The notes beneath the pieces were generated by a model. That model was not told where the DNA came from. It made no database searches and was given only the letters and a program-made list of their open reading frames with translations. Positions 3,209-52,637 of a stretch of DNA of 64,000 bases are shown here, piece by piece. How positions within the stretch are numbered: the first letter of the stretch is position 1; each line of letters starts with the position of its first letter. Origin of the DNA: Carpediemonas membranifera BICM (Eukaryota > Protista > Fornicata); contig JAHDYR010000025.1 of NCBI GenBank assembly GCA_019828565.1, positions 372,001 through 436,000 on the forward strand. The letters are read 5' to 3'. Both the position numbers and the translations under genes were made by a program.

Positions 3209-3587
3209 CTCTGTTGTTCTTTCCAAGTCAACAGTCGCGAAGTCGTTGAAGGTCATAGCAAAGTACCTACGGGCCCGAACAGATGCCATGCGAGAGTTTG
3301 ACCTGGTGCCGAGCAGCCGGCTCGCGGCCCTACAGAAGCAGCTCGAGTCACTGCAGAGCAAGCCGAGAGAGGAGCGGAAGATGCCAGCGAGGACGGGAGA
3401 GCGCAGACGCAATGACGGCGCGGCCGAGGGGGCCAAGCCTGAGCGGCGGCAAGTGGGCCGCGGCTGCTTCAACTGCGGCGAAAAGGGTCACGACTCGGCC
3501 GACTGCCCACACGAGGAGCCGAAGTGCTTCAGGTGCGGCGAGTTCGGCCACAAGTCGCACCAGTGCACAGTTGTAAAAGCCATCTGA
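3209..3587 (+). pseudogene. gag: 3' remnant of gag with two CCHC zinc knuckles
   Basis: CFNCGEKGHDSADC and CFRCGEFGHKSHQC; the N-terminal part is replaced by element A sequence. Confidence 0.85.
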
Positions 3588-3603
3588 GTATCCTTTCTGT
3601 TTT

Positions 3604-6600
3604 ATGTTAGCGTCCAAGACTATCTGGCAGGAGAAGGCCAGTCTGCTGGGCGAAGAGTTGATCGTCCGCATGGACACCTGCTCCTCGTTCAGCGTCGTGC
3701 CGAGGGACTGGGCCGTCGAGAAGGGACTGAAGATCGCCACGCGGGGCGAGACAGTCCGCTTGGCTGACGAGTCGATGAGGAGGGTCTACCGAGTGTTGTC
3801 AGATGTGCCGATCACCCTCCACCTCGACAGAGAGGTCACCGCGACGCCGACCTGGTATGCGATGGACAAGGCCGAGTCGTTCCTCATCAACATGGAGGTG
3901 ATTGACTCCCTCGGCCTAATCAACCGCAACCTTGACACCGAAGCAGACCCCATCCAGGTCATCTCCAAGCTCACAGAGGACTGGGCCGAGAGATACAGCG
4001 ACTGCTTCGGCGATGCAGGCGAACCAGCAGACCTTAAGCCGTTCAAGGTCACGCTGAAGAAGGACGCCCGACCCTACTTCCGTCTGCCCCGAAGGTTCCC
4101 AAGACAGGTGGAGGATGAACTCCGGTCAGAGATGCAGAAGCTGGAGGAAAGCGGGATCATCATCCCAACCAAGTCTCCCTGGAGCAGCTCAGTGGTCATG
4201 GTGCGGAAGAAGGCCGGGACGTGGCGGCCGTGCATGGACTACTCGCCACTGAACGAGCTCCTGGCGTCCATGACTCAGCACGACTTGCCGTCGACGGAAG
4301 AGCTGATCGAGAGGCTGAGGGGCAACAAGTACTTCGCAGCACTTGACCTCAGCAAGGCCTTCCATCAGGTCCCGGTGCACCCCGACACACAGGAGTACCT
4401 GGCGTTCACGTACTCCAAGGGGCACTATACCTACACTACGATGCCGTTCGGCCTTGCCACCGCGGCTGGCCATATGCAAGAGGCCTTAGAGGAGGCTTTC
4501 GCGGACATGCTGGGCACGGCGTGTCTTGTGTACGTGGACGACATCATCGTCTATGGGTCGACCTGGGAAGAGTACCAGGCGAACCTGATGCGGGTGATGG
4601 ACCGGGTGCGAGAGAAGAAGCTGAAGCTCAACAAGAACAAGTGCTTTTTCGGGTTGACGGAGGTGGAGTACCTCGGATGGATAGTGTCGGCGGAAGGAAA
4701 GCGCATCCCCCATGGCGCGTCCAGGGTGTCCAGGAGCTGCCCGACCCGACAAACGTGAGTGACGTCAGGTCCACATTGGGCATCTTCAACTTCTTCTCCC
4801 AGTTCATCCCCGGCTACGCGGACATCACCGAGCCGATCCGCAAGCTGGAGATCAAGGGCCAGACGTTCGTGTGGGGCGACCCCCAGAGAGAGGCGTTCAA
4901 GAGACTGAAGAAGATCGTCACCTCCCCCACACTGTTGGTCACACCGGGCCCTGACGACCGCCTACAGCTGTTCACCGACGCGTCCGACACCGGTGTCGGC
5001 GCAGTGCTGGTCAGAGTCGAGGACGACGGGTCGAAGCGACCTGTGATGTTCTTCTCCAAGGCCCTGACAGCAAGCCAGCGCAAGTGGAGCACCTACCGCA
5101 AGGAGGCATTCGCCATCATAGCGGCCACGAGGAAGATGAGACGGTTCCTAGCCACAAGGGAGTTTGAGATGTTCACGGACCACCGTAACCTCGTGTACAC
5201 GTGGGGCAACGTCGACCCCATGGTGCAGCGCTGGGCACTTGAGCTGGGCAACCTCAAGTTCAGCATCACCCACGTGCCTGGTAAGTCTAATACGGTCGCG
5301 GACGGCCTGTCCAGAATGCCCCGCGCAGAAGCCGAGAGCCTGACACCAGAGCAGCAGGGTGCGATCGTGTCCGTGATGTGTGCAGTCGACGCAGCGGAGG
5401 AAGAGTCGGAAGAAGTCGCCGCCGACGAGCCGAGAGTTCGGTTCCGCGAAGAGGCGGCAGGACAGCCTGACCGCGAGCGCGACGAGGCAGACGAAAGCGA
5501 CACCGAGGAAGCAGCCGGGACAGACGAGGGCGACACCCTTGACGCCGAGCCCGAAGAGGAGGGCACGTTCCCGGCCATACCCGAGTCCCAGAAGCTGCCA
5601 CGCTTCAAGTCCGTTCACGGACCTGGCACCGGTCACCACGGGGTTGACCAGACGCTGTGGAAGCTCGAGGATAAGGGATTGCGCTGGGACACTGCGGACA
5701 CGGACGTCCAGAGGATGGTTAAGGAGTGCCCCGTGTGCCAGAAGAACGCCGAACACCGGTCACGCGAGCAATATCAGGAGCAGCTGCGCATGCCAGCGTC
5801 GCCGTTCAGTCGCGTGTTCGCCGACACCATCAACATGGCAGAGGCAGACCAGGGTTACCGGTACATCCTGGTGCTGGTGGAGGAGTCGACGAGGTGGGTC
5901 ACCCTGTGCCCACTGAAGACGGTGACCTCCGCCGCCACCATCAGAGCAATCAGGGAAAGATACCTCACACACTTCCCGCCCCCGGTCGAGTGGGTGACCG
6001 ATAGCGGACGGCAGTTCGACTCGAAGGAGTTCAAGTCGTTCGCGGCAGAGCTAGGCGGGGGCGCGAAGACGACCACCCCGTACCATCACGAGGAGAATGG
6101 GATCGTTGAGCGCAGGAATCGCGAAGTGAACCGCCACCTCAGGGACGAGATGCATCAGCGCGGCACGAAGCAATGGATGGGCCTACTGCCAGCGGTTCAG
6201 AACATCATCAACCAGGCTAGATCTGCCACGACAGGCACGTCACCCTGGAAGCTAGTGGTGTCCACAGAGCGGGAAGGGAAGATGACACTGTCGAACCAGG
6301 AGAGAGCCGACGTTACGGACGTCATTGACAAGATGGTCCGGAACGAGAAGATGAGAGCTCAACAGCGCAGGGACGCGGCGAAGAAGACGTACGACGCGGC
6401 CAAGGCCAGACAGGACAAGCACAACAAGAGGACACCGACCCGTATCACAGCCAAGGCGTGGGTCATGGTCGACAGGGATGCAGAACAGAGAGGGAAGTAC
6501 CAGCTACGATGGAGAGGCCCACTTCAGGTGGTCAAGAAGGCACCTGGAAACGCCAGCTCGTTCGTGATAAGGGACCCCGAGACGAACAAGACGTATAAGA

Positions 6601-6938
6601 AGCACGTGAAGCATCTGAAGCTCGCAGAAGGCGACTGGGATGAGGAGAAGGCGAAGGCAGAATGCGCCAAGGACCGTATGCACACGTATATCAAAGAGAT
6701 CGTCACGCACAGGATCAAGAAGGACGTGATGAAGACGCCAGAGGTGAAGGTGCGCTGGTTAGGATACGAACCAGCAGACGACACGTGGAGAAACCCAACA
6801 GACGAGGATATGAGAGGCAATGCGATACTTCAGCAGTACCTGCAGGTGAATACACCCCTAGAGGAAGCCATGAAGCGGTTTGATGATTTGAAGCTCAGAA
6901 TGTCGGCCCGCCAATCAAATGGCACTCGGCAGGATTAG
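3604..6938 (+). CDS. pol: Pol (PR-RT | RNaseH-IN-chromodomain), split by a -1 frameshift near 4695-4711
   Basis: Motifs MDTCSS, LDLSKAFHQ, MPFGL, YVDD, FTDASDTG, HH-CC, DDE and WLGY chromodomain lie across two overlapping ORFs. Confidence 0.9.
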
Positions 6939-6964
6939 ACATCGCATTGAAGGAGGGGGGGTAG

Positions 6965-7056
6965 TGATGCATTCAAATCCCCTAGTTTGGACCATTTACA
7001 CCACCACGGGTCTAAACCTCCTCAGTAAACACATTGTTTGACCCTTCAATAGCACA
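6965..7056 (+). repeat. 3' LTR of family B copy 1 (92 bp)
   Basis: Identical to 16979-17070 and 21532-21623; preceded by a PPT at 6949-6961. Confidence 0.95.
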
Positions 7057-10311: not shown

Positions 10312-10887
10312 TCACCCCGTCTTCCAAAGGATCACCGCCTGTGGCATCTGCGGCATGGGCACCACCTTGGGCGAGACTTTCTCCGGAGTGACAGCCTTGG
10401 GTACCTTCTGCACTGGCTCCATCATCTTGATCGCCTCGTCGTTCGCCTCATTGATGGCGTTTGTGGCGATCGCGGCGACGTGTGCCGTGGGAATCCTGAT
10501 GAGTCTCTCGACGGGCACGTACGTCAGCTTCAGATCACCGATGAAGCGGAGCACAGCGATATGGCGGTCCATATCCTCGGGCTGGATCACGCTGATAACG
10601 ACGGCGGGGTAGAGCTCCGTCATCCAGAGGTTCGAAGCGATGTCGAACCAGAGTGACATGACAATCTCGCCGACCTCAAAGCCTTCGTACTTCTGTGGGA
10701 ACTGCATTATATCATTGCTAGTCACTTCATCCGTGTCTGTGGGATCCTCAACGTCTTCAACGACGTATTTGTCGGCTGCGGCGTCATAAGCCTGGACACG
10801 GCCGAGGAACCACGATGGTTTGTTATTCATCAGTTTGTAAAAAGCAACCACGCCTGTTAATGGCGAAGGGGAGCTGCTCTGCGCCAT
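10312..10887 (-). CDS. SGF29-like tandem tudor domain protein
   Basis: WFLGRV..Y.....KYVVEDVED, FEVGEIVMSLW and TELYPAVV resemble the SGF29 tudor pair. Confidence 0.6.
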   Translation of the reverse strand: MAQSSSPSPLTGVVAFYKLMNNKPSWFLGRVQAYDAAADKYVVEDVEDPTDTDEVTSNDIMQFPQKYEGFEVGEIVMSLWFDIASNLWMTELYPAVVISVIQPEDMDRHIAVLRFIGDLKLTYVPVERLIRIPTAHVAAIATNAINEANDEAIKMMEPVQKVPKAVTPEKVSPKVVPMPQMPQAVILWKTG

Positions 10888-10944
10888 TGCGGAATCGCCG
10901 ACCTTAAAATGCACACTGAAGCAAAAGGGCGAAAAATGACGTAT

Positions 10945-13900
10945 TTATAACCGTAACTGTCCATCGTGACTGACCGCCAGCAGCATCTTATTCGCAACAA
11001 CCTCCGTTTCCTCCTCGACAAGCACCGGCAGCACCGTCTTGACGAACGAATCCCGGTCGAACACGGTGTTAACCAGCGGACCTCTCGGCCCGGCCGGCGT
11101 CTGCAGCACGGTGTTCCCGTGCCCAGTGGCCGCCACGACCATCGGTACCCAGGCGGTTGGGTCGGGGCCGAGGGAAGTGTCGATCACGGCAACTGTGCGG
11201 TACGCCTCCAGGGTTTCAGCGTGCACCAGCCTGGAAATAAGCCAGGGTAGTCCCCGGGGGGCGCTGAAGAAGATGACTCTGTCGCTAAGGGGCGTGATGA
11301 ACAGCTCCCGCGGGATGTCACGGCCAACCACAGCGACGTCGTTCGCCTCGAGGTCGACCGCCTCACAGAACACCCGGAGGTCGGTCATCGTAAGGTTGGC
11401 GGCGTCGATGATGTACATGGTCTCGAGCCCGGCCAGTGGCTGTGTCCGGGGGCCCTGGAAGTATGCGAAGTCGCCGTCGTTCATCACGCGGTGCATATTC
11501 CCCTTCTCGCCCTGGCGGACGGCGCCCGTGTGGCCCTGTGTGCCGCTGAGGAGGAGGCCGGGATGCTTGGCTCCGGGGAGGTAGAGGTTCGGGCGGCGGG
11601 CGTTCTTGCCCTTGGAGATGTTGTTGACGAAGTCTGCGTTGAAGTAGGTCGTCTCGGGGACGCCAGCGAGGGCGGCGTCTGCGGCCTCGACGCCCTGCAT
11701 GAAGGAATGGTCCATGTTGCCGACCTCGTACTTCCAGCCGCCGAAGCGACCGCGCGAGAAGATGTCGTGCTCCATGAGCCAAGGCTGGACGTCTGCGAGA
11801 ATCGCGTCGCGGTCGACCGACGGCGTGGGGTAGCCGTGCTTCTCGGTCCAGTGGAAGCGCGAGACGATCTCGGACGACGGCTCGAGGAAGCCGACGTTCC
11901 GCATGCCCTGGATGACGTCGTTGACAATCGTCGCGTCGCTGACTGGGCGGTGGCTCGACTCAGCGACCTCGGCCATCAGGCTGTAGTGGCCGGTGGGCGC
12001 GATCTCGGGCGCGTAGTTCGAGAGCACCGTGATGCGGTAGAAGGGCGCGTCGTCGGTTGGGAAGTAGTACCAGCAGCGGTTGACGAACTTGTCGGGCAGC
12101 GCGCCCTTCACGCCGATGCCGATCACATGCGTCGTCGAGAACGACAGCGCGTCCGCCGCGGCGCTGAAGCGCTTCGAGTCGTCGTCGCTCGTTGTCTCCG
12201 CGGCCGCGACCAAGCGCAGCAGCTCGTCGAGCGGCATCGTCGTGATCAGCTTCGAGTAGTGCGCGGTGCGCGTGCGGCCCGCGGCGTTCGTCGTCGTCAC
12301 GCTGTGGCGCTCGGGGTCGACGCCGACGATGCGCGTGCCGTGCTCGATGACTCCGGACAGGTCCTCGCCGACGCGCCGGAAGATCTCACCGACGCCTCCG
12401 ACGGAGGGGTAGAGGAACATGTTGTTCGGGCCCCAGCTCGGCGCGTCTTTGTTCTCGGCCACGCGCTGGCGCAGCTCGGTAACGTTGACGCGGGCGACGC
12501 GCTCGCCCATCCACGCGGTGCCCATCTCCTCGGCGGGGTGGGCCCAGACCTTGTAGTTGTACGGGATGAGGAAGATCTCCGCGAGACCCTCGCCGAAGCT
12601 CTGGTAGATCCACTCGCGGAAGTTCGCGGGCTTCGGCAGCGCCTGGCCCTGGATCGCCTCGAGCCCGTCGAAGATGCGCGTCTGCTCGGCCTTCGTCAGC
12701 CGGTGGATGTTGTTCTGGAACGGGTACGGCACCTCCGTCTCCTTGTCCATCACGACCCACGCCTGGCGCTCGTGGCGCTCCTGGTCGTGTTCGAGCACCG
12801 AGTCAACGACGTTGTCGAAGTACTCGTAGTGCGAGAAGAGCACGTGTCCGCCGAAGTCCCACCAGAAGCCCTTGTTGTCCTGCCGCGACCGCGCCAGGCC
12901 GCCGTCCACGTCGCTCATCTCGAGCACGCGGTAGTTCCGCAACCCGAGCTCGCGAAGCCGGTGCGCCGCCCCGAGCCCCGTCGGCCCGCTGCCCACAATC
13001 ATGATGGGCGCGTTTTGCTCGCCGTTGAACGTCAACTCCCATTCGTTCATGCTCACGGGCGTGTTGCCCGCCTCGGGAGCAGCGGCAAGGGTGCTGACCG
13101 TCCTCGGAACGTCGAAGAACCGGCGTTTGATGGCCATGGCGTTGCGGTCGTTGTCCACCTCGCGGATGGAGGGCAGGGTCCGTTTGATTAATTCAAACAT
13201 CTCGATGTTGGACCGATCGAGGAAGGCGGCGTGGGCCCTGTTGTTCTTAGTCGTGCCCTGTTGAGATTTTCGGTCGAGGTGGGCGGCCGGCGTGGCGTCT
13301 AGCACTGCCATTCGACCCAGCCCGCGGCGATAGGCTTCTCTGGCAAAGATGAAGTCGTAACCCCAGCCGACCGTCGCGTCGAACTGCAGGGTTGGGTAGA
13401 CCACACGATTGTAGTACGCCCTGCTGTAGATGGGGAGCATGACCTCGATGAACGTGGTCATCCGCCCGTCCCCGGTGCCGGACTGGGTCGCCGTGACGGG
13501 CCTCCAATGGCCCTCATGTTCCGAGAGCGAGGGCTGAGCGGCCCACACGCGGTGGCGCTCCATGATCTCCATGGCCTGTGTGACGTTGAACGGCTTCTTC
13601 AGCGATGGCACGTCAATCCCGCCGTCGTCGTCCCAGAACAGGATATAGTCATACGCATCTGCCACGGCGGGGGTGATGATGCGGCTGGGGAACCACCACT
13701 TGCCCTGCTTCTTGATGTCGACCCATAGCACGTCCGACGCCCACTGGTACTCTGACCACTCAGACCGGTCGTACCGGAAAAAGACGTAGTCGAAGTCCTC
13801 GTGCCCGAAGCTCTCGACAATGGCGGCGATGGCCTCCTTTCCACCCTTGCCCGCGGGGATGGCAACCAGGCCGCGCTTGGGTCCACGCTTGGGACCGGAG

Positions 13901-15600
13901 TCGAGGGGGGTGATCGTGGCGGGGACGTTCGAGCTGACGGGCGTCATGCGGCCGGGCGGAGGCGAGTAGAGGCTCGGGCGGCGGGCGTTCTTGCCCTTGG
14001 AGATGTTGTTGACGAAGTCTGCGTTGAAGTAGGTCGTCTCGGGGACGCCAGCGAGGGCGGCGTCTGCGGCCTCGACGCCCTGCATGAAGGAATGGTCCAT
14101 GTTGCCGACCTCGTACTTCCAGCCGCCGAAGCGACCGCGCGAGAAGATGTCGTGCTCCATGAGCCAAGGCTGGACGTCTGCGAGAATCGCGTCGCGGTCG
14201 ACCGACGGCGTGGGGTAGCCGTGCTTCTCGGTCCAGTGGAAGCGCGAGACGATCTCGGACGACGGCTCGAGGAAGCCGACGTTCCGCATGCCCTGGATGA
14301 CGTCGTTGACAATCGTCGCGTCGCTGACTGGGCGGTGGCTCGACTCAGCGACCTCGGCCATCAGGCTGTAGTGGCCGGTGGGCGCGATCTCGGGCGCGTA
14401 GTTCGAGAGCACCGTGATGCGGTAGAAGGGCGCGTCGTCGGTTGGGAAGTAGTACCAGCAGCGGTTGACGAACTTGTCGGGCAGCGCGCCCTTCACGCCG
14501 ATGCCGATCACATGCGTCGTCGAGAACGACAGCGCGTCCGCCGCGGCGCTGAAGCGCTTCGAGTCGTCGTCGCTCGTTGTCTCCGCGGCCGCGACCAAGC
14601 GCAGCAGCTCGTCGAGCGGCATCGTCGTGATCAGCTTCGAGTAGTGCGCGGTGCGCGTGCGGCCCGCGGCGTTCGTCGTCGTCACGCTGTGGCGCTCGGG
14701 GTCGACGCCGACGATGCGCGTGCCGTGCTCGATGACTCCGGACAGGTCCTCGCCGACGCGCCGGAAGATCTCACCGACGCCTCCGACGGAGGGGTAGAGG
14801 AACATGTTGTTCGGGCCCCAGCTCGGCGCGTCTTTGTTCTCGGCCACGCGCTGGCGCAGCTCGGTAACGTTGACGCGGGCGACGCGCTCGCCCATCCACG
14901 CGGTGCCCATCTCCTCGGCGGGGTGGGCCCAGACCTTGTAGTTGTACGGGATGAGGAAGATCTCCGCGAGACCCTCGCCGAAGCTCTGGTAGATCCACTC
15001 GCGGAAGTTCGCGGGCTTCGGCAGCGCCTGGCCCTGGATCGCCTCGAGCCCGTCGAAGATGCGCGTCTGCTCGGCCTTCGTCAGCCGGTGGATGTTGTTC
15101 TGGAACGGGTACGGCACCTCCGTCTCCTTGTCCATCACGACCCACGCCTGGCGCTCGTGGCGCTCCTGGTCGTGTTCGAGCACCGAGTCAACGACGTTGT
15201 CGAAGTACTCGTAGTGCGAGAAGAGCACGTGTCCGCCGAAGTCCCACCAGAAGCCCTTGTTGTCCTGCCGCGACCGCGCCAGGCCGCCGTCCACGTCGCT
15301 CATCTCGAGCACGCGGTAGTTCCGCAACCCGAGCTCGCGAAGCCGGTGCGCCGCCCCGAGCCCCGTCGGCCCGCTGCCCACAATCATGATGGGGTACTTG
15401 TTTTCAACAACATTGGGCTCCATTGGCACTATAGCGGCGTATGGCGCACGTAGGAGGGAGAATAACGTGAACAGGATGGTGCCAGCGGTAAAGCAAAGGA
15501 CTAAGGCACACGCAAACGTAGCTTGCACTGGCTTCTGCCGTATGAACCTTTTGGTCGCAATATAGAGGCGAATGAGGTCAATCAACGCTGCATCTGCCAT
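10945..15600 (-). CDS. Membrane-anchored fusion: TM - UDP-galactopyranose mutase - DUF707 glycosyltransferase-like - UGM - degenerate DUF707
   Basis: Two copies of the eukaryotic-type UGM motifs GSGPTGLGAA, DFGGHVLFSHY and SRGRFGGWKYEVGNMDHSFMQGVEA. The middle region has KQGKWW..R.I.P.V...YDYILFWDDD, FIEVMLP.YSR and GWGYDF (DUF707). There is an N-terminal hydrophobic anchor. Confidence 0.85.
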   Translation of the reverse strand: MADAALIDLIRLYIATKRFIRQKPVQATFACALVLCFTAGTILFTLFSLLRAPYAAIVPMEPNVVENKYPIMIVGSGPTGLGAAHRLRELGLRNYRVLEMSDVDGGLARSRQDNKGFWWDFGGHVLFSHYEYFDNVVDSVLEHDQERHERQAWVVMDKETEVPYPFQNNIHRLTKAEQTRIFDGLEAIQGQALPKPANFREWIYQSFGEGLAEIFLIPYNYKVWAHPAEEMGTAWMGERVARVNVTELRQRVAENKDAPSWGPNNMFLYPSVGGVGEIFRRVGEDLSGVIEHGTRIVGVDPERHSVTTTNAAGRTRTAHYSKLITTMPLDELLRLVAAAETTSDDDSKRFSAAADALSFSTTHVIGIGVKGALPDKFVNRCWYYFPTDDAPFYRITVLSNYAPEIAPTGHYSLMAEVAESSHRPVSDATIVNDVIQGMRNVGFLEPSSEIVSRFHWTEKHGYPTPSVDRDAILADVQPWLMEHDIFSRGRFGGWKYEVGNMDHSFMQGVEAADAALAGVPETTYFNADFVNNISKGKNARRPSLYSPPPGRMTPVSSNVPATITPLDSGPKRGPKRGLVAIPAGKGGKEAIAAIVESFGHEDFDYVFFRYDRSEWSEYQWASDVLWVDIKKQGKWWFPSRIITPAVADAYDYILFWDDDGGIDVPSLKKPFNVTQAMEIMERHRVWAAQPSLSEHEGHWRPVTATQSGTGDGRMTTFIEVMLPIYSRAYYNRVVYPTLQFDATVGWGYDFIFAREAYRRGLGRMAVLDATPAAHLDRKSQQGTTKNNRAHAAFLDRSNIEMFELIKRTLPSIREVDNDRNAMAIKRRFFDVPRTVSTLAAAPEAGNTPVSMNEWELTFNGEQNAPIMIVGSGPTGLGAAHRLRELGLRNYRVLEMSDVDGGLARSRQDNKGFWWDFGGHVLFSHYEYFDNVVDSVLEHDQERHERQAWVVMDKETEVPYPFQNNIHRLTKAEQTRIFDGLEAIQGQALPKPANFREWIYQSFGEGLAEIFLIPYNYKVWAHPAEEMGTAWMGERVARVNVTELRQRVAENKDAPSWGPNNMFLYPSVGGVGEIFRRVGEDLSGVIEHGTRIVGVDPERHSVTTTNAAGRTRTAHYSKLITTMPLDELLRLVAAAETTSDDDSKRFSAAADALSFSTTHVIGIGVKGALPDKFVNRCWYYFPTDDAPFYRITVLSNYAPEIAPTGHYSLMAEVAESSHRPVSDATIVNDVIQGMRNVGFLEPSSEIVSRFHWTEKHGYPTPSVDRDAILADVQPWLMEHDIFSRGRFGGWKYEVGNMDHSFMQGVEAADAALAGVPETTYFNADFVNNISKGKNARRPNLYLPGAKHPGLLLSGTQGHTGAVRQGEKGNMHRVMNDGDFAYFQGPRTQPLAGLETMYIIDAANLTMTDLRVFCEAVDLEANDVAVVGRDIPRELFITPLSDRVIFFSAPRGLPWLISRLVHAETLEAYRTVAVIDTSLGPDPTAWVPMVVAATGHGNTVLQTPAGPRGPLVNTVFDRDSFVKTVLPVLVEEETEVVANKMLLAVSHDGQLRL
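11589..13008. repeat. 1420-bp direct repeat (second UGM domain)
   Basis: Appears identical to 13974-15393 (offset 2385). Confidence 0.92.
13974..15393. repeat. 1420-bp direct repeat (first UGM domain)
   Basis: Appears identical to 11589-13008. Confidence 0.92.
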
Positions 15601-15741
15601 TTCACGTTCCTTTTTTGAGAGTCGTGCAACCCAATCTCAACCATGGTCAAAACAGACGACCCAACCGGCCTGCATCCCAGTAGTGGTGTGCAGCATCAAT
15701 ACAGGCAGGGGCATTTATCGGTGCCAATAATAATGGTAAAG

Positions 15742-17083: not shown

Positions 17084-18154
17084 ATGAAGAAGGATGACGA
17101 TGACGACGACCCAAAAGGGACTTACCCGAAGTATCTCCGGCACACTGCAGCCGACTGGGTGAGGTTCCGCATGAGCTACGCACTCTATGCTGAAGATGAG
17201 GTCAAGCCGAAGACCCTCTTCGAGTGCATCGACGCGAAAGTGAGAACAAGTATCAAGGACGCATACCAAGCTCTGGAGGACGACGAAAGCTCCGATGACA
17301 GCTCTGACAGCTCGAGTGAAGACGACGAGGAGATGTTCAGCGCCAACGAGGGTAGCGACAGCAGCAGGGGCGGCGAAGACGCGCACGCCCAGAGCGACTC
17401 CGAGGATGACGCCCGGAGCACACTCATCGCTAACCCGGCCCGGAAGAAGAAGACAAGCGGCAAGACGACCGCCCGGGACGACGCTTTGCTCCGGTACATC
17501 ATGGCTCAAGACCAAGAGAAGAAGGAGGCGAAGACAACGAGGAGGAAGCGCGATGAGCGCTGGGTGGTGATGGCTGAGGCCACACTAACCAATATCAGTC
17601 TTCAGCGCGCGTACCGCGAGCTTCGCAAGCTCCGTGAGACCTCTTTCACCCGTTACCGCCATGTGTTCACGGATATGGTAGATCTGTTCGAGAAGGTCGG
17701 ATCCCTGGATGCTAGAGAGCTCCAGGAGATCGTTCTGGCGAGCCTCGATGACGAGACGATCGCATCGTCTCTTCGCTCTGTTGTTCTTTCCAAGTCAACA
17801 GTCGCGAAGTCGTTGAAGGTCATAGCAAAGTACCTACGGGCCCGAACAGATGCCATGCGAGAGTTTGACCTGGTGCCGAGCAGCCGGCTCGCGGCCCTAC
17901 AGAAGCAGCTCGAGTCACTGCAGAGCAAGCCGAGAGAGGAGCGGAAGATGCCAGCGAGGACGGGAGAGCGCAGACGCAATGACGGCGCGGCCGAGGGGGC
18001 CAAGCCTGAGCGGCGGCAAGGGGGCCGCGGCTGCTTCAACTGCGGCGAAAAGGGTCACGACTCGGCCGACTGCCCACACGAGGAGCCGAAGTGCTTCAGG
18101 TGCGGCGAGTTCGGCCACAAGTCGCACCAGTGCACAGTTGTAAAAGCCATCTGA
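17084..18154 (+). CDS. gag: Gag (356 aa) with acidic/Ser linker and two CCHC knuckles
   Basis: First ORF after the LTR; CX2CX4HX4C occurs twice. Confidence 0.92.
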   Translation: MKKDDDDDDPKGTYPKYLRHTAADWVRFRMSYALYAEDEVKPKTLFECIDAKVRTSIKDAYQALEDDESSDDSSDSSSEDDEEMFSANEGSDSSRGGEDAHAQSDSEDDARSTLIANPARKKKTSGKTTARDDALLRYIMAQDQEKKEAKTTRRKRDERWVVMAEATLTNISLQRAYRELRKLRETSFTRYRHVFTDMVDLFEKVGSLDARELQEIVLASLDDETIASSLRSVVLSKSTVAKSLKVIAKYLRARTDAMREFDLVPSSRLAALQKQLESLQSKPREERKMPARTGERRRNDGAAEGAKPERRQGGRGCFNCGEKGHDSADCPHEEPKCFRCGEFGHKSHQCTVVKAI

Positions 18155-18170
18155 GTATCCTTTCTGTTTT

Positions 18171-21100
18171 ATGTTAGCGTCCAAGACTATCTGGCAGGAG
18201 AAGGCCAGTCTGCTGGGCGAAGAGTTGATCGTCCGCATGGACACCTGCTCCTCGTTCAGCGTCGTGCCGAGGGACTGGGCCGTCGAGAAGGGACTGAAGA
18301 TCGCCACGCGGGGCGAGACAGTCCGCTTGGCTGACGAGTCGATGAGGAGGGTCTACCGAGTGTTGTCAGATGTGCCGATCACCCTCCACCTCGACAGAGA
18401 GGTCACCGCGACGCCGACCTGGTATGCGATGGACAAGGCCGAGTCGTTCCTCATCAACATGGAGGTGATTGACTCCCTCGGCCTAATCAACCGCAACCTT
18501 GACACCGAAGCAGACCCCATCCAGGTCATCTCCAAGCTCACAGAGGACTGGGCCGAGAGATACAGCGACTGCTTCGGCGATGCAGGCGAACCAGCAGACC
18601 TTAAGCCGTTCAAGGTCACGCTGAAGAAGGACGCCCGACCCTACTTCCGTCTGCCCCGAAGGTTCCCAAGACAGGTGGAGGATGAACTCCGGTCAGAGAT
18701 GCAGAAGCTGGAGGAAAGCGGGATCATCATCCCAACCAAGTCTCCCTGGAGCAGCTCAGTGGTCATGGTGCGGAAGAAGGCCGGGACGTGGCGGCCGTGC
18801 ATGGACTACTCGCCACTGAACGAGCTCCTGGCGTCCATGACTCAGCACGACTTGCCGTCGACGGAAGAGCTGATCGAGAGGCTGAGGGGCAACAAGTACT
18901 TCGCAGCACTTGACCTCAGCAAGGCCTTCCATCAGGTCCCGGTGCACCCCGACACACAGGAGTACCTGGCGTTCACGTACTCCAAGGGGCACTATACCTA
19001 CACTACGATGCCGTTCGGCCTTGCCACCGCGGCTGGCCATATGCAAGAGGCCTTAGAGGAGGCTTTCGCGGACATGCTGGGCACGGCGTGTCTTGTGTAC
19101 GTGGACGACATCATCGTCTATGGGTCGACCTGGGAAGAGTACCAGGCGAACCTGATGCGGGTGATGGACCGGGTGCGAGAGAAGAAGCTGAAGCTCAACA
19201 AGAACAAGTGCTTTTTCGGGTTGACGGAGGTGGAGTACCTCGGATGGATAGTGTCGGCGGAGGGAAAGCGCATCCCCCATGGCGCGTCCAGGGTGTCCAG
19301 GAGCTGCCCGACCCGACAAACGTGAGTGACGTCAGGTCCACATTGGGCATCTTCAACTTCTTCTCCCAGTTCATCCCCGGCTACGCGGACATCACCGAGC
19401 CGATCCGCAAGCTGGAGATCAAGGGCCAGACGTTCGTGTGGGGCGACCCCCAGAGAGAGGCGTTCAAGAGACTGAAGAAGATCGTCACCTCCCCCACACT
19501 GTTGGTCACACCGGGCCCTGACGACCGCCTACAGCTGTTCACCGACGCGTCCGACACCGGTGTCGGCGCAGTGCTGGTCAGAGTCGAGGACGACGGGTCG
19601 AAGCGACCTGTGATGTTCTTCTCCAAGGCCCTGACAGCAAGCCAGCGCAAGTGGAGCACCTACCGCAAGGAGGCATTCGCCATCATAGCGGCCACGAGGA
19701 AGATGAGACGGTTCCTAGCCACAAGGGAGTTTGAGATGTTCACGGACCACCGTAACCTCGTGTACACGTGGGGCAACGTCGACCCCATGGTGCAGCGCTG
19801 GGCACTTGAGCTGGGCAACCTCAAGTTCAGCATCACCCACGTGCCTGGTAAGTCTAATACGGTCGCGGACGGCCTGTCCAGAATGCCCCGCGCAGAAGCC
19901 GAGAGCCTGACACCAGAGCAGCAGGGTGCGATCGTGTCCGTGATGTGTGCAGTCGACGCAGCGGAGGAAGAGTCGGAAGAAGTCGCCGCCGACGAGCCGA
20001 GAGTTCGGTTCCGCGAAGAGGCGGCAGGACAGCCTGACCGCGAGCGCGACGAGGCAGACGAAAGCGACACCGAGGAAGCAGCCGGGACAGACGAGGGCGA
20101 CACCCTTGACGCCGAGCCCGAAGAGGAGGGCACGTTCCCGGCCATACCCGAGTCCCAGAAGCTGCCACGCTTCAAGTCCGTTCACGGACCTGGCACCGGT
20201 CACCACGGGGTTGACCAGACGCTGTGGAAGCTCGAGGATAAGGGATTGCGCTGGGACACTGCGGACACGGACGTCCAGAGGATGGTTAAGGAGTGCCCCG
20301 TGTGCCAGAAGAACGCCGAACACCGGTCACGCGAGCAATATCAGGAGCAGCTGCGCATGCCAGCGTCGCCGTTCAGTCGCGTGTTCGCCGACACCATCAA
20401 CATGGCAGAGGCAGACCAGGGTTACCGGTACATCCTGGTGCTGGTGGAGGAGTCGACGAGGTGGGTCACCCTGTGCCCACTGAAGACGGTGACCTCCGCC
20501 GCCACCATCAGAGCAATCAGGGAAAGATACCTCACACACTTCCCGCCCCCGGTCGAGTGGGTGACCGATAGCGGACGGCAGTTCGACTCGAAGGAGTTCA
20601 AGTCGTTCGCGGCAGAGCTAGGCGGGGGCGCGAAGACGACCACCCCGTACCATCACGAGGAGAATGGGATCGTTGAGCGCAGGAATCGCGAAGTGAACCG
20701 CCACCTCAGGGACGAGATGCATCAGCGCGGCACGAAGCAATGGATGGGCCTACTGCCAGCGGTTCAGAACATCATCAACCAGGCTAGATCTGCCACGACA
20801 GGCACGTCACCCTGGAAGCTAGTGGTGTCCACAGAGCGGGAAGGGAAGATGACACTGTCGAACCAGGAGAGAGCCGACGTTACGGACGTCATTGACAAGA
20901 TGGTCCGGAACGAGAAGATGAGAGCTCAACAGCGCAGGGACGCGGCGAAGAAGACGTACGACGCGGCCAAGGCCAGACAGGACAAGCACAACAAGAGGAC
21001 ACCGACCCGTATCACAGCCAAGGCGTGGGTCATGGTCGACAGGGATGCAGAACAGAGAGGGAAGTACCAGCTACGATGGAGAGGCCCACTTCAGGTGGTC

Positions 21101-21505
21101 AAGAAGGCACCTGGAAACGCCAGCTCGTTCGTGATAAGGGACCCCGAGACGAACAAGACGTATAAGAAGCACGTGAAGCATCTGAAGCTCGCAGAAGGCG
21201 ACTGGGATGAGGAGAAGGCGAAGGCAGAATGCGCCAAGGACCGTATGCACACGTATATCAAAGAGATCGTCACGCACAGGATCAAGAAGGACGTGATGAA
21301 GACGCCAGAGGTGAAGGTGCGCTGGTTAGGATACGAACCAGCAGACGACACGTGGAGAAACCCAACAGACGAGGATATGAGAGGCAATGCGATACTTCAG
21401 CAGTACCTGCAGGTGAATACACCCCTAGAGGAAGCCATGAAGCGGTTTGATGATTTGAAGCTCAGAATGTCGGCCCGCCAATCAAATGGCACTCGGCAGG
21501 ATTAG
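18171..21505 (+). CDS. pol: Pol (PR-RT | RNaseH-IN-chromodomain), split by a -1 frameshift near 19262-19278
   Basis: Same motifs as copy 1; RT homology changes frame between EGKRIP and PWRVQGV. Confidence 0.9.
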
Positions 21506-21531
21506 ACATCGCATTGAAGGAGGGGGGGTAG

Positions 21532-21623
21532 TGATGCATTCAAATCCCCTAGTTTGGACCATTTACACCACCACGGGTCTAAACCTCCTCAGTAAACACA
21601 TTGTTTGACCCTTCAATAGCACA
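21532..21623 (+). repeat. 3' LTR (92 bp)
   Basis: Identical to the 5' LTR and follows the PPT. Confidence 0.96.
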
Positions 21624-49777: not shown

Positions 49778-50353
49778 GGTCACCGAGATCGAGGGCCAGA
49801 CGGAGGCGGCGGCCGAAGCCATCCTGGGCCTGCCGAAGATCGGCAACCTCAACAAGGCGGCCCTGACCCAGCCCGTGACGGTGGAGTTCAAGGTGCCCTC
49901 GCTGGCAATGAGCGGGACCCGCGTGAAGTTCTTGCGGGTCATGGAGAAGTCGGGGTACTCCGCGGCCACGTGGATCAAGTACGAGACCAGGACGGGCGTG
50001 TTCGAGGTCCGCCGCTAGAAGCTTGCTGTTTGATAAATTTATGGGCGTGACCCGGACCTCGGGCGAGTTACTCAACCTTCTTGCTGCTCTTCTTCTTGGA
50101 GGGCTCCTCCGTGTCAGAGCGGATGTCACCCCGCACGCTGCCGAACACGATGCCGAAGATCATCTTGAGGATCATGTAGCTCCACATCACGTGGAGGCAG
50201 TAGAGCAGGCTGAAGAACACAGAGAGGGAGCGGTGGAGGGGCATGACGCCGCCGTTGAGCTCGGGGCCGTGGAAGATGAGGGGCAGGAAGATGTGCTTGG
50301 GCAGCATGAACAGACGAGTGTAGAGGAAGGACGACGCGAAGGCGACGAAGGGG
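49778..50353 (-). repeat. 576-bp inverted duplicate of 52303-52878 (3' ends of the ceramide synthase and AP-1 mu genes)
   Basis: Reverse-complement identity with one noticed substitution (GIVFG vs GIMFG). Confidence 0.93.
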
Positions 50354-50606
50354 TGACCTGTTGTCTCAGTGAAGTGAGATTCGCCAGTTGATCGGGTCGA
50401 CCATGGATTTTTTTACCCAAAAAAGTCGGCATACGCCAGTACTTCGCGTCCCCACTGGTGAGCTGACCGCGATCTCCTGTGATATCCTCCTGTCGCCAAA
50501 AATTCTTCCGAGAAATTTGCGAAAAGTCTGAAACGAGGGTGAACGATGTTTGTTATCAATACGGCCCGTGAGAACACCGGCGGTAAACAACGTCTTCTTA
50601 TACAGT

Positions 50607-51320
50607 ATGAGCGATCCATCTAAGATTGGAATGATGCAAGGTGCGTTTTTCGTTGGGCGTGTTGAGCTCCTGCGCTGGCTGAACGATTTCCTGCAGCTTA
50701 ACTACAAGAAGGTTGAGGATGTGAGCAATGGCGCCGCATTCTGCCAGCTAATGGACTATTTGTATCCCGGGAAAGTGCCCCTTCACCGCGTTAACTTCGA
50801 AGCCAAGCTGGAATGGGAGAACGAGAAGAACTTCAAGATCCTGCAGGGGACATTCGAGAAGCTCCACATTGACAAGAACATTGAGGTCGGGAAGCTCATC
50901 AAGGGCAAGTACCAGGACAACCTCGAGTTCTTCCAGTGGATGCACGCGTTCTTCCTCCAGTGCGCCCCCGCTGGCGGCGCCGACTACGACCCCGTCCTCC
51001 GCAGACACCAGGCTGGTGCCCGCAACAAGAACATTCGCGGCCCAACCGCCAGTGCCGCTGCAACTGAGCGGGCCGCGCCCGTTCGGGCAGCCCGCCCCGC
51101 CGCTGGTGCCGGCGCTCCTGCTAACAGCGCAGCGGTGTCCCAGCTCAAGGACGAAATCGCCCAGCTGAACATCGCCGTGGCGACTGTCGAGCACGAACGC
51201 GACTTCTACTTTGGAAAGCTCCGCGACATCGAGATCCTCTGCCAGGATTCCGAGGCCGCCAAGCAGGACGGGTTCGTCGAGAAGATCACGGCTATCATGT
51301 ATGCTCCCGATGAGGAATAG
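50607..51320 (+). CDS. EB1: Microtubule plus-end binding protein EB1
   Basis: CH domain GR.ELL.WLN, GAAFCQLMD, QDNLEF.QW; EBH ERDFYFGKLRDIEILCQ. Confidence 0.96.
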   Translation: MSDPSKIGMMQGAFFVGRVELLRWLNDFLQLNYKKVEDVSNGAAFCQLMDYLYPGKVPLHRVNFEAKLEWENEKNFKILQGTFEKLHIDKNIEVGKLIKGKYQDNLEFFQWMHAFFLQCAPAGGADYDPVLRRHQAGARNKNIRGPTASAAATERAAPVRAARPAAGAGAPANSAAVSQLKDEIAQLNIAVATVEHERDFYFGKLRDIEILCQDSEAAKQDGFVEKITAIMYAPDEE

Positions 51321-51633
51321 GCAAATCCCACGATAAGCGGCTACTTCTGTAAAGAGCTGACGATTGATTGGGAGACAGGGAAGACGTTGCTACATCCGTA
51401 GGCTGAGTGCAGAGTGCTGTGCGGACCAGTTTGTGCTCGCCAGTGAAGTAGGCGACCAGCCAGAACCAGTTAAGTAGTATTGAGCATCCGAAAATGGAAA
51501 TCCCAGGGCAATGGCTGTTAGCGTCCTCCAAATACCTCACGAACTCGAAGGGCCGGGCACAGACCTAAGCCGGGGCCGTGGTTCGAGAGTTGATTGAGTC
51601 GTTTCTGGCCCGATCTATCGCTGAAAGAACATC

Positions 51634-52588: not shown

Positions 52589-52637
52589 CTCGCCCGAGGT
52601 CCGGGTCACGCCCATAAATTTATCAAACAGCAAGCTT

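What the first reader, a model, noticed from the sequence alone, without database searches (positions are those of the whole stretch)
10945..15600. Membrane-anchored UDP-galactopyranose mutase fused to DUF707: a possible 'make-and-transfer' galactofuranosylation enzyme
Seen: an N-terminal signal anchor, then UGM, a DUF707-like domain with a DDD motif, a second UGM, and a decayed DUF707-like domain (WLISRLVH.E.LEAYRTVAVID). Known: characterised eukaryotic UGMs (fungi, trypanosomatids, nematodes) are soluble cytosolic single-domain flavoenzymes, and DUF707 is a putative GT-A glycosyltransferase of uncertain specificity. Inference: type II topology would put the mutase in the secretory lumen, channelling UDP-Galf directly to the transferase. 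The fusion suggests this DUF707 is a furanosyltransferase.
Basis: partly seen in the sequence, partly recalled or inferred. Interest (0 to 1): 0.82.

Follow-up and report, generated by a model that had tools for sequence, protein, structure and literature searches.

The report
Membrane-anchored UGM fused to DUF707 glycosyltransferase
A small protist-like eukaryote carries its only genuine UDP-galactopyranose mutase inside one 1551-residue membrane-anchored protein, fused twice over to a DUF707 glycosyltransferase-like domain, which suggests that galactofuranose is made and transferred by a single enzyme inside the secretory pathway.

Summary
Window 10945-15600 (minus strand) is one uninterrupted 1551-codon ORF.

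- **Layout:** N-terminal signal anchor, canonical eukaryotic UGM, DUF707 domain with WDDD, a second UGM, and a 211-aa C-terminal domain.
- **UGM:** it matches T. cruzi UGM at E 3e-127, and all 11 active-site residues are kept.
- **DUF707:** Pfam gives 110 bits. The model has a GT-A fold nearest to ppGalNAc-T, TarS, TarP and RmlT.
- **Second UGM:** its DNA is 99.93% identical to the first over 1428 nt.
- **C-terminal domain:** it is a decayed DUF707 front half (hhalign 88.6%, E 2.6e-6) that has lost the DxD.

New here:
- This gene holds the only canonical UGM in the 24-Mb genome.
- Two or three paralogues, already noted by this scan on other pieces of the genome, share the architecture but carry gutted pseudo-UGMs.
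- A mosaic identity pattern shows that gene conversion homogenises the UGM repeats.
- Charge asymmetry in all four anchors predicts type II (lumenal) topology.
- No such fusion was found elsewhere, but those searches were weak.

Galf-transferase activity, topology and a single transcript remain inferred. DUF707 also occurs in plants and bacteria that lack UGM. I rate it a new variant of known kinds, interest about 0.65.

The parts
10945..15600 (-). Whole ORF, 1551 codons plus stop (TAA at 10945-10947); start ATG at 15598-15600 in a good context (A at -3, G at +4)
   Evidence: identical to public protein model P0001
15451..15519 (-). Signal-anchor transmembrane segment (aa ~28-50), preceded by a basic cytosolic tail (aa 1-27; window 15520-15600)
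   Evidence: Hydropathy peak KD 2.24. N-flank net charge +4, C-flank 0. The same pattern holds in three paralogues.
13966..15393 (-). UGM copy 1 (aa 70-545), canonical eukaryotic UDP-galactopyranose mutase domain
   Evidence: PDB 4dsg E 3e-127, 3ute E 2e-114. G123, H124, V125, R239, N264, Y384, R394, Y462, R490, Y496 and N500 align with the TcUGM active-site residues listed in PMC4192007.
13021..13965 (-). Linker, DUF707 GT-A domain (Pfam match 13228-13878), then a conserved linker to UGM2
   Evidence: Pfam PF05212 109.9 bits. AF2 model pLDDT 77, pTM 0.79. Foldseek PDB top hits are GT-A enzymes at E ~2e-8. ESM Atlas plant DUF707 TM 0.70. Linker residues are invariant among paralogues.
13624..13632 (-). 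DDD (aa 657-659) of the WDDD motif, the presumed DxD metal/nucleotide-sugar site
   Evidence: D83 and D84 are invariant and D82 nearly invariant in the 11-sequence alignment that includes bacterial homologues. The motif follows strand 77-80 of the model.
11581..13008 (-). UGM copy 2 (aa 865-1340), 1427/1428 nt identical to copy 1 (the one difference is 11588 T against 13973 C)
   Evidence: Short-read contigs collapse the two copies into one contig at twice the depth of the unique parts.
10948..11580 (-). C-terminal 'X' domain (aa 1341-1551): a degenerate DUF707 front half without DxD. It is single-copy in the genome.
   Evidence: hhalign prob 88.6%, E 2.6e-6. Orthologous X domains in paralogues show dN/dS 0.31. 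Only own-genome relatives appear among 1.8 billion representatives. Single copy.

Best explanation
This is a real single gene for a type II membrane protein of the secretory pathway. Its large C-terminal part, predicted to face the lumen, consists of two tandem modules.

- **Module 1** is a catalytically intact FAD-dependent UDP-galactopyranose mutase followed by an intact GT-A glycosyltransferase domain of the DUF707 family, with WDDD.
- **Module 2** is an identical mutase followed by a DUF707 remnant that has lost its DxD. That remnant is still under purifying selection and is probably non-catalytic.

Proposed mechanism (inferred):
- UDP-Galp imported into the ER or Golgi lumen is isomerised to UDP-Galf by the mutase domains.
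- The thermodynamically disfavoured furanose nucleotide is used at once by the tethered DUF707 domain, which transfers Galf to a still unknown glycan acceptor.
- No cytosolic mutase and no UDP-Galf transporter are then needed.

The (UGM-DUF707)x2 layout is old, because it is shared with paralogues about 40-50% identical. The two UGM halves are kept near-identical by ongoing intragenic gene conversion.

Shown here: domain identities, active-site conservation, GT-A fold, the anchor and its charge bias, uniqueness of the canonical UGM in the genome, ORF continuity, and concerted evolution.
Inferred: topology, compartment, donor specificity and coupling.
For: - **Domains and ORF:**
- **Active site:** all 11 TcUGM active-site residues (PMC4192007) are conserved in the alignment.
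- **DUF707 fold:** the confident model matches the GT-A enzymes ppGalNAc-T2/T10, RmlT, TarS and TarP at E ~2e-8, prob 1.0, and plant DUF707 at TM 0.70. The WDDD, QP, GR..F.E.M, GYD and D...H positions, invariant across bacterial and eukaryotic members, are present.
- **Anchor:** four paralogous proteins each have one N-terminal hydrophobic segment. The N-flank has net charge +4 to +5 and the C-flank 0 to +1.
- **Only canonical UGM:** the UGM matches in the genome lie in this gene and in paralogues. The paralogue UGM-like domains lack about 90 aa, including the R176 and N201 equivalents. They have also lost the His62, Tyr317, Tyr395 and Tyr429 equivalents. There is no bacterial-type GLF in the genome.
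- **Architecture conserved:** the C5 and C17 paralogues have the same layout. Linker residues between DUF707 and UGM2 are invariant across paralogues, so the junction is translated.
- **Selection:** dN/dS is 0.31-0.36 for the DUF707, X and UGM-like domains between C5 and C17.
- **Gene conversion:** the C5 gene has a mosaic of 643 nt (1 mismatch) and 221 nt (3 mismatches) around a diverged core. C17 has 1155 nt with no mismatch. This gene has 1428 nt with 1 mismatch.
- **Read contigs:** the data set is probably a transcriptome. Depths are N-terminal unique part 43, DUF707 unique part 39, collapsed repeat 80.6. That is one passage through the DUF707 loop per molecule. Coverage reaches 48 nt upstream of the ATG.
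- **Literature:** plant DUF707 proteins are predicted GT-A transferases with DxD, their best template is a ppGalNAc-T, and one was found in a Golgi-enriched proteome (PMC3522684, PMC5217351).
Against: - No enzymatic, localisation or full-length cDNA evidence exists.
- UGM needs reduced FAD. Known eukaryotic UGMs are cytosolic (GFP data in PMC3893270) and, from general knowledge, are reduced by NAD(P)H. A reductant in the secretory lumen is not assured.
- DUF707 is not generally tied to Galf: 3 of 4 bacterial genomes with DUF707 had no glf (incomplete MAGs). Plants have DUF707 but no UGM (general knowledge).
- The paralogues keep the fusion although their UGM-like domains look catalytically dead. 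The pairing may therefore serve a structural role rather than substrate supply.
- The read data set is only guessed to be RNA. Contigs cannot phase the repeat. The X region has twice the expected depth, and no contig covers 10797-10979, which includes the stop codon.
- The in-frame Met60 and Met852 could give anchor-less products.
- The interface prediction between UGM and DUF707 gave no verdict.
Confidence: 0.5

Rival explanations
1. The fusion is real, but the DUF707 domain is not a galactofuranosyltransferase. It transfers another sugar, and the UGM domains either supply UDP-Galf to other transferases in the same compartment or act mainly as a scaffold or oligomerisation module.
For: - DUF707 occurs without UGM in bacteria and in plants (PMC3522684; absence of UGM in plants is general knowledge).
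- Paralogues retain the pairing with pseudo-UGM domains that lack most active-site residues.
- Bacterial DUF707 domains are fused to various unrelated N-terminal regions.
Against: - The only canonical UGM of the genome is covalently tied to an intact DUF707.
- Domain fusions of consecutive pathway steps are a classical indicator of functional linkage (general knowledge).
- I did not search the genome for any other candidate Galf transferase, so none is known.
Confidence: 0.2
2. The catalytic domains work in the cytosol, as in the classical pathway. Either the anchor inserts N-out/C-in, or anchor-less products arise from Met60, from Met852 (an internal start giving UGM2-X), or from proteolysis.
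For: - All characterised eukaryotic UGMs are cytosolic (PMC3893270; PMC4630932 abstract).
- UGM needs a reductant that is plentiful in the cytosol (general knowledge).
- Met60 has as good a start context as Met1 and lies about 10 residues before the Rossmann motif, like the native N-terminus of TcUGM.
- A short upstream ORF overlaps the first ATG.
Against: - The positive-inside rule favours N-in in all four paralogues.
- The anchor is conserved in position across paralogues whose N-terminal sequences have otherwise diverged.
- Read-contig depths do not fit an extra UGM2-X transcript: the repeat is 80.6, which equals 43 + 39.
- Plant DUF707 proteins are treated in the literature as Golgi glycosyltransferase candidates.
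Confidence: 0.15
3. The internal duplication, or the whole four-domain layout, is an assembly artefact, for example a mis-resolved tandem repeat. The true gene would then be a simpler anchor-UGM-DUF707 or anchor-UGM-X.
For: - Near-perfect 1.4-kb repeats are error-prone in assembly.
- The related contig C41 contains an N gap and perfectly repeated DUF707 and UGM-like units.
- The C17 paralogue has a 1-nt homopolymer indel that may be an assembly error.
- An anchor-UGM-like-X gene without DUF707 does exist (P0003).
Against: - Two paralogues on other contigs have the same four-domain order with different sequences.
- In independent short-read contigs the repeat has twice the depth of both the N-terminal and the DUF707 unique parts. 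The DUF707 unique contig abuts the repeat at both ends, as expected for one loop per molecule.
- The X region is single-copy.
Confidence: 0.05
4. The gene family is a decaying, non-functional relic: pseudo-enzymes on their way to loss.
For: - Paralogue UGM-like domains are gutted.
- The second DUF707 has lost its DxD.
- C17 is frameshifted in the assembly.
Against: - This gene has a 1551-codon open frame with every checked catalytic residue intact.
- dN/dS is about 0.3 in the paralogues' domains, X included.
- The locus is covered by contigs of a probable transcriptome.
Confidence: 0.05

Closest known systems
Eukaryotic UDP-galactopyranose mutase (T. cruzi UGM, PDB 4DSG; A. fumigatus UgmA/GlfA, PDB 3UTE)
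   Same: - Full-length similarity: E 3e-127 and 2e-114.
- GxGxxG FAD-binding motif and the GGH histidine loop.
- Equivalents of R176, N201, Y317, R327, Y395, R423, Y429 and N433 are all conserved.
   Different: - Known enzymes are soluble, cytosolic, single-domain proteins of about 480-510 aa.
- This one follows a signal anchor and occurs twice in one polypeptide.
- Each copy is followed by a DUF707-type domain.
DUF707 (Pfam PF05212): putative non-CAZy GT-A glycosyltransferases of plants, a few bacteria and viruses
   Same: - Pfam score far above the cut-off.
- Family-invariant residues, WDDD included.
- GT-A fold with ppGalNAc-T as the nearest solved structure, the same template reported for Arabidopsis At2g28310 (PMC3522684).
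   Different: - Plant members are stand-alone proteins of about 390 aa.
- Here the domain has no anchor of its own and is embedded between two UGM domains.
- A second, degenerate copy closes the protein.
- No member of the family has a demonstrated activity.
Fungal and trypanosomatid Galf pathway: cytosolic UGM, Golgi UDP-Galf transporter (GlfB/UgtA/UgtB), Golgi-lumenal Galf transferases (GfsA of GT31; LPG1 family)
   Same: The same overall chemistry is expected: UDP-Galp to UDP-Galf, then transfer to glycans in the secretory pathway (PMC4630932, PMC11538602, PMC6279836).
   Different: - In those systems there are three separate proteins in two compartments, and a dedicated transporter is required.
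- Here mutase and putative transferase are one polypeptide on one side of the membrane.
- The transferase fold family (DUF707) differs from GfsA and LPG1.
Type II Golgi-anchored nucleotide-sugar interconverting enzymes (UDP-xylose synthase UXS, plant GAE and MUR4); a functional analogy from general knowledge
   Same: A short cytosolic tail, a signal anchor and a lumenal catalytic domain that converts a nucleotide sugar where it is consumed.
   Different: - Those are SDR-fold, NAD-dependent enzymes and are not fused to transferases.
- No mutase of this kind is known. Plant UDP-arabinopyranose mutases are cytosolic (PMC6861824).

Membership tests
Eukaryotic-type UDP-galactopyranose mutase | N-terminal FAD-binding Rossmann motif GxGxxG | tested here: met
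   GSGPTG at aa 75-80 and aa 870-875. Pfam NAD_binding_8 E 1.7e-19, two stretches.
Eukaryotic-type UDP-galactopyranose mutase | Full-length sequence similarity to structurally solved UGMs | tested here: met
   4dsg E 3.2e-127 over query 71-532; 3ute E 2.2e-114.
Eukaryotic-type UDP-galactopyranose mutase | Active-site residues (TcUGM G61, H62, V63, R176, N201, Y317, R327, Y395, R423, Y429, N433) | tested here: met
   All 11 are identical in the alignment, as G123, H124, V125, R239, N264, Y384, R394, Y462, R490, Y496 and N500. The residue list comes from PMC4192007. Chain index minus 3 equals native numbering; that offset is my inference.
Eukaryotic-type UDP-galactopyranose mutase | Interconversion of UDP-Galp and UDP-Galf | not testable with these tools
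   Needs an enzyme assay.
DUF707 (PF05212) | Match to the family HMM above the gathering threshold | tested here: met
   109.9 bits against 24.1, aa 575-791, profile positions 38-269 of 299. Six-frame search of the genome gives the same result.
DUF707 (PF05212) | GT-A-like fold with a DxD after a central beta strand | tested here: met
   Model pLDDT 77, pTM 0.79, with WDDD directly after strand 77-80. Foldseek to ppGalNAc-T2/T10, RmlT, TarS and TarP at E ~2e-8. Atlas DUF707 clusters at TM 0.66-0.70.
DUF707 (PF05212) | Glycosyltransferase activity and donor specificity | not testable with these tools
   No member of the family is biochemically characterised in the papers found.
DUF707, applied to the C-terminal X domain (aa 1341-1551) | Match to the family HMM | tested here: not met
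   There is no second Pfam DUF707 hit even at E <= 1.
DUF707, applied to the C-terminal X domain (aa 1341-1551) | Remote homology by profile-profile comparison, in the same position after a UGM domain | tested here: inconclusive
   With 4 paralogue DUF707 domains, hhalign gives prob 53.5%, E 1.3e-4. With 11 sequences it gives prob 88.6%, E 2.6e-6 over 91 columns, front half only.
DUF707, applied to the C-terminal X domain (aa 1341-1551) | DxD motif | tested here: not met
   The aligned position reads V-I-D-T in this gene, with no acidic pair. The paralogues have L-A-D-C, M-L-D-C and L-E-E-C.
Type II (signal-anchor) secretory-pathway membrane protein | A single N-terminal hydrophobic segment of TM length, with no other TM | tested here: met
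   aa ~28-50, KD 2.24. There is no other window above 1.6 in 1551 aa. Paralogues show the same.
Type II (signal-anchor) secretory-pathway membrane protein | Positive-inside charge bias (N-terminal flank basic) | tested here: met
   N-flank net +4 and C-flank 0. Paralogues have +4 to +5 against 0 to +1.
Type II (signal-anchor) secretory-pathway membrane protein | Experimentally shown lumenal orientation and ER/Golgi residence | not testable with these tools
   Needs localisation and topology experiments.

The most novel reading that the evidence does not exclude
This would be the first lumenal, membrane-anchored UGM, so Galf biosynthesis would run without a cytosolic mutase or a UDP-Galf transporter. 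The covalent UGM-DUF707 link would also reveal DUF707 as a family of furanosyl-transferases. That would make the eleven uncharacterised Arabidopsis DUF707 proteins candidates for missing transferases of furanose sugars in the plant cell wall, such as Araf, Apif or aceric acid. Two of them were already picked by co-expression as candidates for RG-II, a pectin rich in furanosides (PMC3522684).
Probability: 0.12. Interest if true: 0.85.

Novelty: new variant of a known kind. Interest (0 to 1): 0.65.

Why it matters
- **A handle on DUF707.** This is a widespread putative glycosyltransferase family, with eleven genes in Arabidopsis plus bacterial LOS loci, phages and giant viruses, and none has a known activity. 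A natural fusion with the enzyme that makes UDP-Galf gives a concrete, cheap hypothesis to test: offer UDP-Galf as donor.
- **A challenge to the accepted pathway.** The standard eukaryotic layout is a cytosolic mutase, a dedicated UDP-Galf transporter and lumenal transferases. If the topology prediction holds, this organism makes the furanose nucleotide where it is used. That would parallel lumenal UDP-xylose synthesis.
- **A clean case of concerted evolution.** Gene conversion is confined to one domain of a repeated two-domain module, in several paralogues. The canonical enzyme and its pseudo-enzyme derivatives sit side by side in one genome.

Tried and rejected
- **Word-indexed protein searches.** Three searches all returned nothing: the DUF707 region in the context of the first 864 aa, the DUF707 domain alone, and the 4-paralogue alignment. 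This reflects the 5-residue word prefilter and not absence, because Pfam and metagenome hits exist.
- **Other collection scans.** The viral-contig scan with A1 found nothing. The exact-sequence lookup of P0001 found nothing on record.
- **Exhaustive phmmer.** It found only own-genome proteins plus two low-complexity false positives, P0002 and P0004. No exhaustive search with the DUF707 domain for long fused relatives could therefore be run.
- **Structure models.** The first AF2 model of DUF707 from 4 paralogues failed (pLDDT 33). It was replaced by the 11-sequence model.
- **Interface prediction.** Complex prediction on UGM plus DUF707 gave no verdict (score 0.00, my alignments not used). This is not evidence either way.
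- **Bacterial gene neighbourhood.** Context around three metagenomic DUF707 genes showed other GTs, a methyltransferase or transporters, and no glf. Three of four DUF707-bearing MAGs had no GLF hit. DUF707 was in only 5 of 401 Verrucomicrobiota sampled. A 770-aa open frame around a Chthoniobacter glf was only glf with an unannotated upstream extension.
- **ESM Atlas.** The feature search with aa 1-864 found no cluster of 50 or more members with the fused architecture (best score 0.76).
- **A misreading corrected.** I first took the second DUF707 hit on contig C41 for an X-type domain that had kept DUF707 features. It is a perfect repeat of the first DUF707, cut by an N gap in a small, poorly resolved contig.
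- **Organism.** Its identity could not be established with these tools. A literature probe with a guessed name gave nothing, and I make no claim.
Full report
**1. What is there**

The minus strand of window 10945-15600 is one open reading frame of 1551 codons. A public protein collection holds exactly this product as a gene model (P0001).

The window belongs to a 24.2-Mb eukaryotic assembly of 69 contigs with about 59% G+C. It carries chromovirus-type LTR retrotransposons and ordinary eukaryotic genes such as a prenyltransferase beta subunit, SGF29, a DEAH helicase and a MACPF protein. I could not identify the organism.

**2. Domain map**

| Part | Residues | Evidence |
|---|---|---|
| Signal anchor | ~28-50 | The only strongly hydrophobic segment in the protein |
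| UGM1 | 70-545 | T. cruzi UGM E 3e-127; A. fumigatus UGM E 2e-114 |
| DUF707 | 575-791 | Pfam PF05212, 109.9 bits against a cut-off of 24.1; WDDD at 656-659 |
| UGM2 | 865-1340 | Second UGM copy |
| X domain | 1341-1551 | No Pfam match |

The eleven residues treated as the TcUGM active site in PMC4192007 are Gly61, His62, Val63, Arg176, Asn201, Tyr317, Arg327, Tyr395, Arg423, Tyr429 and Asn433. All are identical in the alignment. Here they are G123, H124, V125, R239, N264, Y384, R394, Y462, R490, Y496 and N500. The numbering offset between the PDB chain and the native protein is my inference.

**3. The DUF707 domain is a GT-A glycosyltransferase-like domain**

- A model built from four paralogues alone failed (pLDDT 33).
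- I then added bacterial and metagenomic DUF707 sequences. The new model is confident over the core (pLDDT 77, pTM 0.79).
- Foldseek places it with the GT-A enzymes ppGalNAc-T2/T10, RmlT, TarS and TarP (E about 2e-8, probability 1.0).
- The ESM Atlas search places it with plant DUF707 proteins (TM 0.70) and a giant-virus 'glycosyltransferase' cluster.
- Several residues are invariant across the 11 sequences, whose identity to this domain is 24-39%. They are the last two Asp of WDDD, QP, GR..F.E.M, GYD and a D...H pair. WDDD follows a beta strand, as a GT-A DxD should.
- This agrees with the only published analysis I found. It predicted a GT-A fold, a DxD and a ppGalNAc-T template for Arabidopsis DUF707 proteins (PMC3522684).
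- No DUF707 protein has a demonstrated activity in the papers found.

**4. The C-terminal domain is a decayed DUF707**

- BLASTP against the DUF707 domain is weak (E 0.09).
- An alignment of the four X domains was compared with the DUF707 profile. It gives probability 53.5% with paralogues only. It gives 88.6% (E 2.6e-6, 91 columns) with the broader profile.
- The match covers the first strand through the DxD position, where the acidic motif is lost.
- X is not junk. Between the C5 and C17 paralogues its dN/dS is 0.31, like DUF707 (0.32) and the UGM-like domain (0.36).
- An exhaustive phmmer search of 1.8 billion representatives found X only in proteins of this same genome.

**5. A gene family, and the only real UGM**

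Six-frame searches of the genome found DUF707 and UGM-like matches only at five places:

| Locus | Product | Layout |
|---|---|---|
| This gene (C13) | 1551 aa | anchor-UGM-DUF707-UGM-X |
| Contig C5 | 1385 aa | same layout |
| Contig C17 | split by a frameshift | same layout; a 1-nt difference in a C run splits the frame, either a real frameshift or an assembly error |
| Contig C41 (16.7 kb, poorly resolved) | 647 aa (P0003) | anchor-UGM-like-X |
| Contig C41 | truncated by the contig end, with an N gap | repeat-rich: DUF707, UGM-like, DUF707 |

The paralogues' UGM-like domains are about 45-49% identical to the one here. Relative to it they:
- lack about 90 residues, including the Arg176 and Asn201 equivalents;
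- have GGH replaced;
- have lost the Tyr317, Tyr395 and Tyr429 equivalents.

I read them as pseudo-UGMs. No stand-alone UGM and no bacterial-type GLF was found. The only catalytically plausible UGM of this organism is therefore the anchored, fused one. This scan's first readers had already flagged the C17 and C5 loci as pseudo-UGM/DUF707 fusions (s1-520743 and s1-520882).

**6. Concerted evolution**

| Gene | Identity between its two UGM units |
|---|---|
| This gene | 1428 nt, one mismatch (11588 against 13973) |
| C17 | 1155 nt, no mismatch, one indel |
| C5 | 643 nt (1 mismatch) and 221 nt (3 mismatches), flanking a core that no longer aligns at the DNA level |

- The partner domains, DUF707 and X, are related only at profile level. 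Each has an orthologue in the other paralogues.
- The duplication of the two-domain module is therefore old. The identity of the UGM halves is best explained by repeated intragenic gene conversion. The C5 mosaic argues against independent recent duplications.
- Independent short-read contigs collapse the two copies into a single unbranched contig at double depth. The identity is therefore not a polishing artefact of the assembly.
- This confirms note s1-536413.

**7. One protein?**

- The linker between DUF707 and UGM2 is in frame. It contains residues invariant among paralogues that are otherwise about 39% identical. It is therefore under protein-level constraint.
- Runs X1 and X2 total about 10 Mb of contigs and show gene-to-gene depth differences of 39 to 421. 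Runs X3 and X4, from the same sample as X1, show poly(T) ends. They look like transcriptome data, but the tool only guesses this.
- Depths there are 43 for the N-terminal unique part (contig 15364-15648, 48 nt beyond the ATG), 39 for the DUF707 unique part and 80.6 for the collapsed repeat. This fits one molecule species that runs anchor-UGM-DUF707-UGM.
- It does not fit an additional UGM2-X transcript.
- Three things remain unexplained. The X region has depth 88, no listed contig covers 10797-10979 (stop codon included), and contigs cannot phase a repeat.
- The upstream gene's poly(A) sites lie at 15702-15718. The downstream gene's ATG is 58 nt past the stop codon. The gene is tightly packed.

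**8. Topology**

- In all four anchored paralogues the 15 residues before the hydrophobic core carry net +4 to +5, and the 15 after it carry 0 to +1.
- By the positive-inside rule the N-terminus is cytosolic and everything else lumenal, the layout of Golgi glycosyltransferases.
- A DUF707 protein was found in a Golgi-enriched plant proteome (PMC5217351).
- Flavoproteins and type II-anchored nucleotide-sugar-converting enzymes such as UXS, GAE and MUR4 exist in the secretory lumen (general knowledge). A lumenal UGM is therefore plausible.
- Its need for reduced flavin is a real difficulty, and alternative starts at Met60 or Met852 cannot be excluded.

**9. Most likely mechanism**

The mutase reaction lies far on the pyranose side (general knowledge). 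A transferase tethered to the mutase would pull the reaction by consuming UDP-Galf as it forms.

I consider the 'make-and-transfer' reading the best single explanation, with about 0.5 confidence for the whole statement. The architecture alone I put at about 0.9, and the Galf-transferase and lumenal parts below 0.5.

The main rival is that DUF707 uses another donor. DUF707 occurs in bacteria without glf, and plants carry DUF707 (PMC3522684) yet lack UGM (general knowledge). The paralogues also keep the fusion with dead UGM-like domains.

**10. Novelty**

- Literature searches found no membrane-anchored UGM and no UGM-glycosyltransferase fusion.
- Known eukaryotic systems use a cytosolic UGM, a UDP-Galf transporter and separate Golgi transferases (PMC4630932, PMC11538602, PMC6279836).
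- No fused relative turned up in the searches I could run. Those searches were insensitive for this question, so 'unique to this lineage' is not established.
- I class it as a new variant of known kinds, with interest 0.65.

Noticed in passing
window 3209-7056 and 17776-21623: Two copies of a chromovirus-type LTR retrotransposon interior (RT, RNase H, integrase, chromodomain) are 99.95% identical over 3848 nt and lie in the same orientation. They bracket the roughly 10.7-kb host segment that contains the UGM-DUF707 gene. I only observed this.
   Followed up: no
window 49778-50361 and 52295-52878: A 584-nt inverted repeat at 99.5% identity flanks the ORFs at 50550-52530.
   Followed up: no
window 15582-15644 (-): A short upstream ORF of 20 codons starts at 15644, out of frame, and overlaps the main ATG at 15600. 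It lies inside the contig that covers the 5' end. It might modulate use of Met1 against Met60.
   Followed up: no
window 10797-11681: In the probable transcriptome contigs the X-domain region (10980-11681) has depth 88, against about 40 for the other unique parts of the gene. No listed contig covers 10797-10979, which includes the stop codon. An AATAAG lies about 10 nt upstream of the contig end at 10980. The X region is single-copy in the assembly. This is unexplained.
   Followed up: partly
window 15702-15718 and 10885-10947: Gene packing is very tight. Poly(A) addition sites of the upstream minus-strand gene lie about 100 nt before this gene's ATG. The next gene's ATG (10885-10887, SGF29-like) is 58 nt after this gene's stop codon.
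   Followed up: no
G000 C5:286499-290656, C17:158079-162250, C41:5966-7906 and C41:13800-16698 (loci L020, L019, L021, L022): These paralogues have the same anchor-UGM-like-DUF707-UGM-like-X layout, or an anchor-UGM-like-X layout. Their UGM-like domains lack about 90 aa and most active-site residues. C17 has a 1-nt indel in a C run that splits the frame. C41 is a small contig with an N gap and perfect internal repeats.
   Followed up: partly
window 11652-11704 (and the same segment in UGM copy 1): A 53-nt piece encoding the motif FMQGVEAADAALAGVPE has contig depth 251, about three times that of the collapsed repeat. The motif is identical at protein level in all paralogues. This suggests the DNA segment is shared between genes, by inter-paralogue conversion or very strong constraint.
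   Followed up: no
window ~13866-13877 (aa 575-578) and paralogues: A GPKR motif directly before the first strand of the DUF707 domain is invariant in the four paralogue DUF707 domains. It could be a dibasic processing site that would release DUF707-UGM2-X from the anchored UGM1. It could equally be structural, since bacterial homologues also have a basic residue there.
   Followed up: no
loci L026, L028, L033, L037: Bacterial DUF707 domains in Verrucomicrobiota and metagenomes often sit at the C-terminus of longer proteins. The N-terminal parts are unrelated, for example an asparagine-synthase-like domain or an unannotated region of about 200 aa. None is a UGM.
   Followed up: partly
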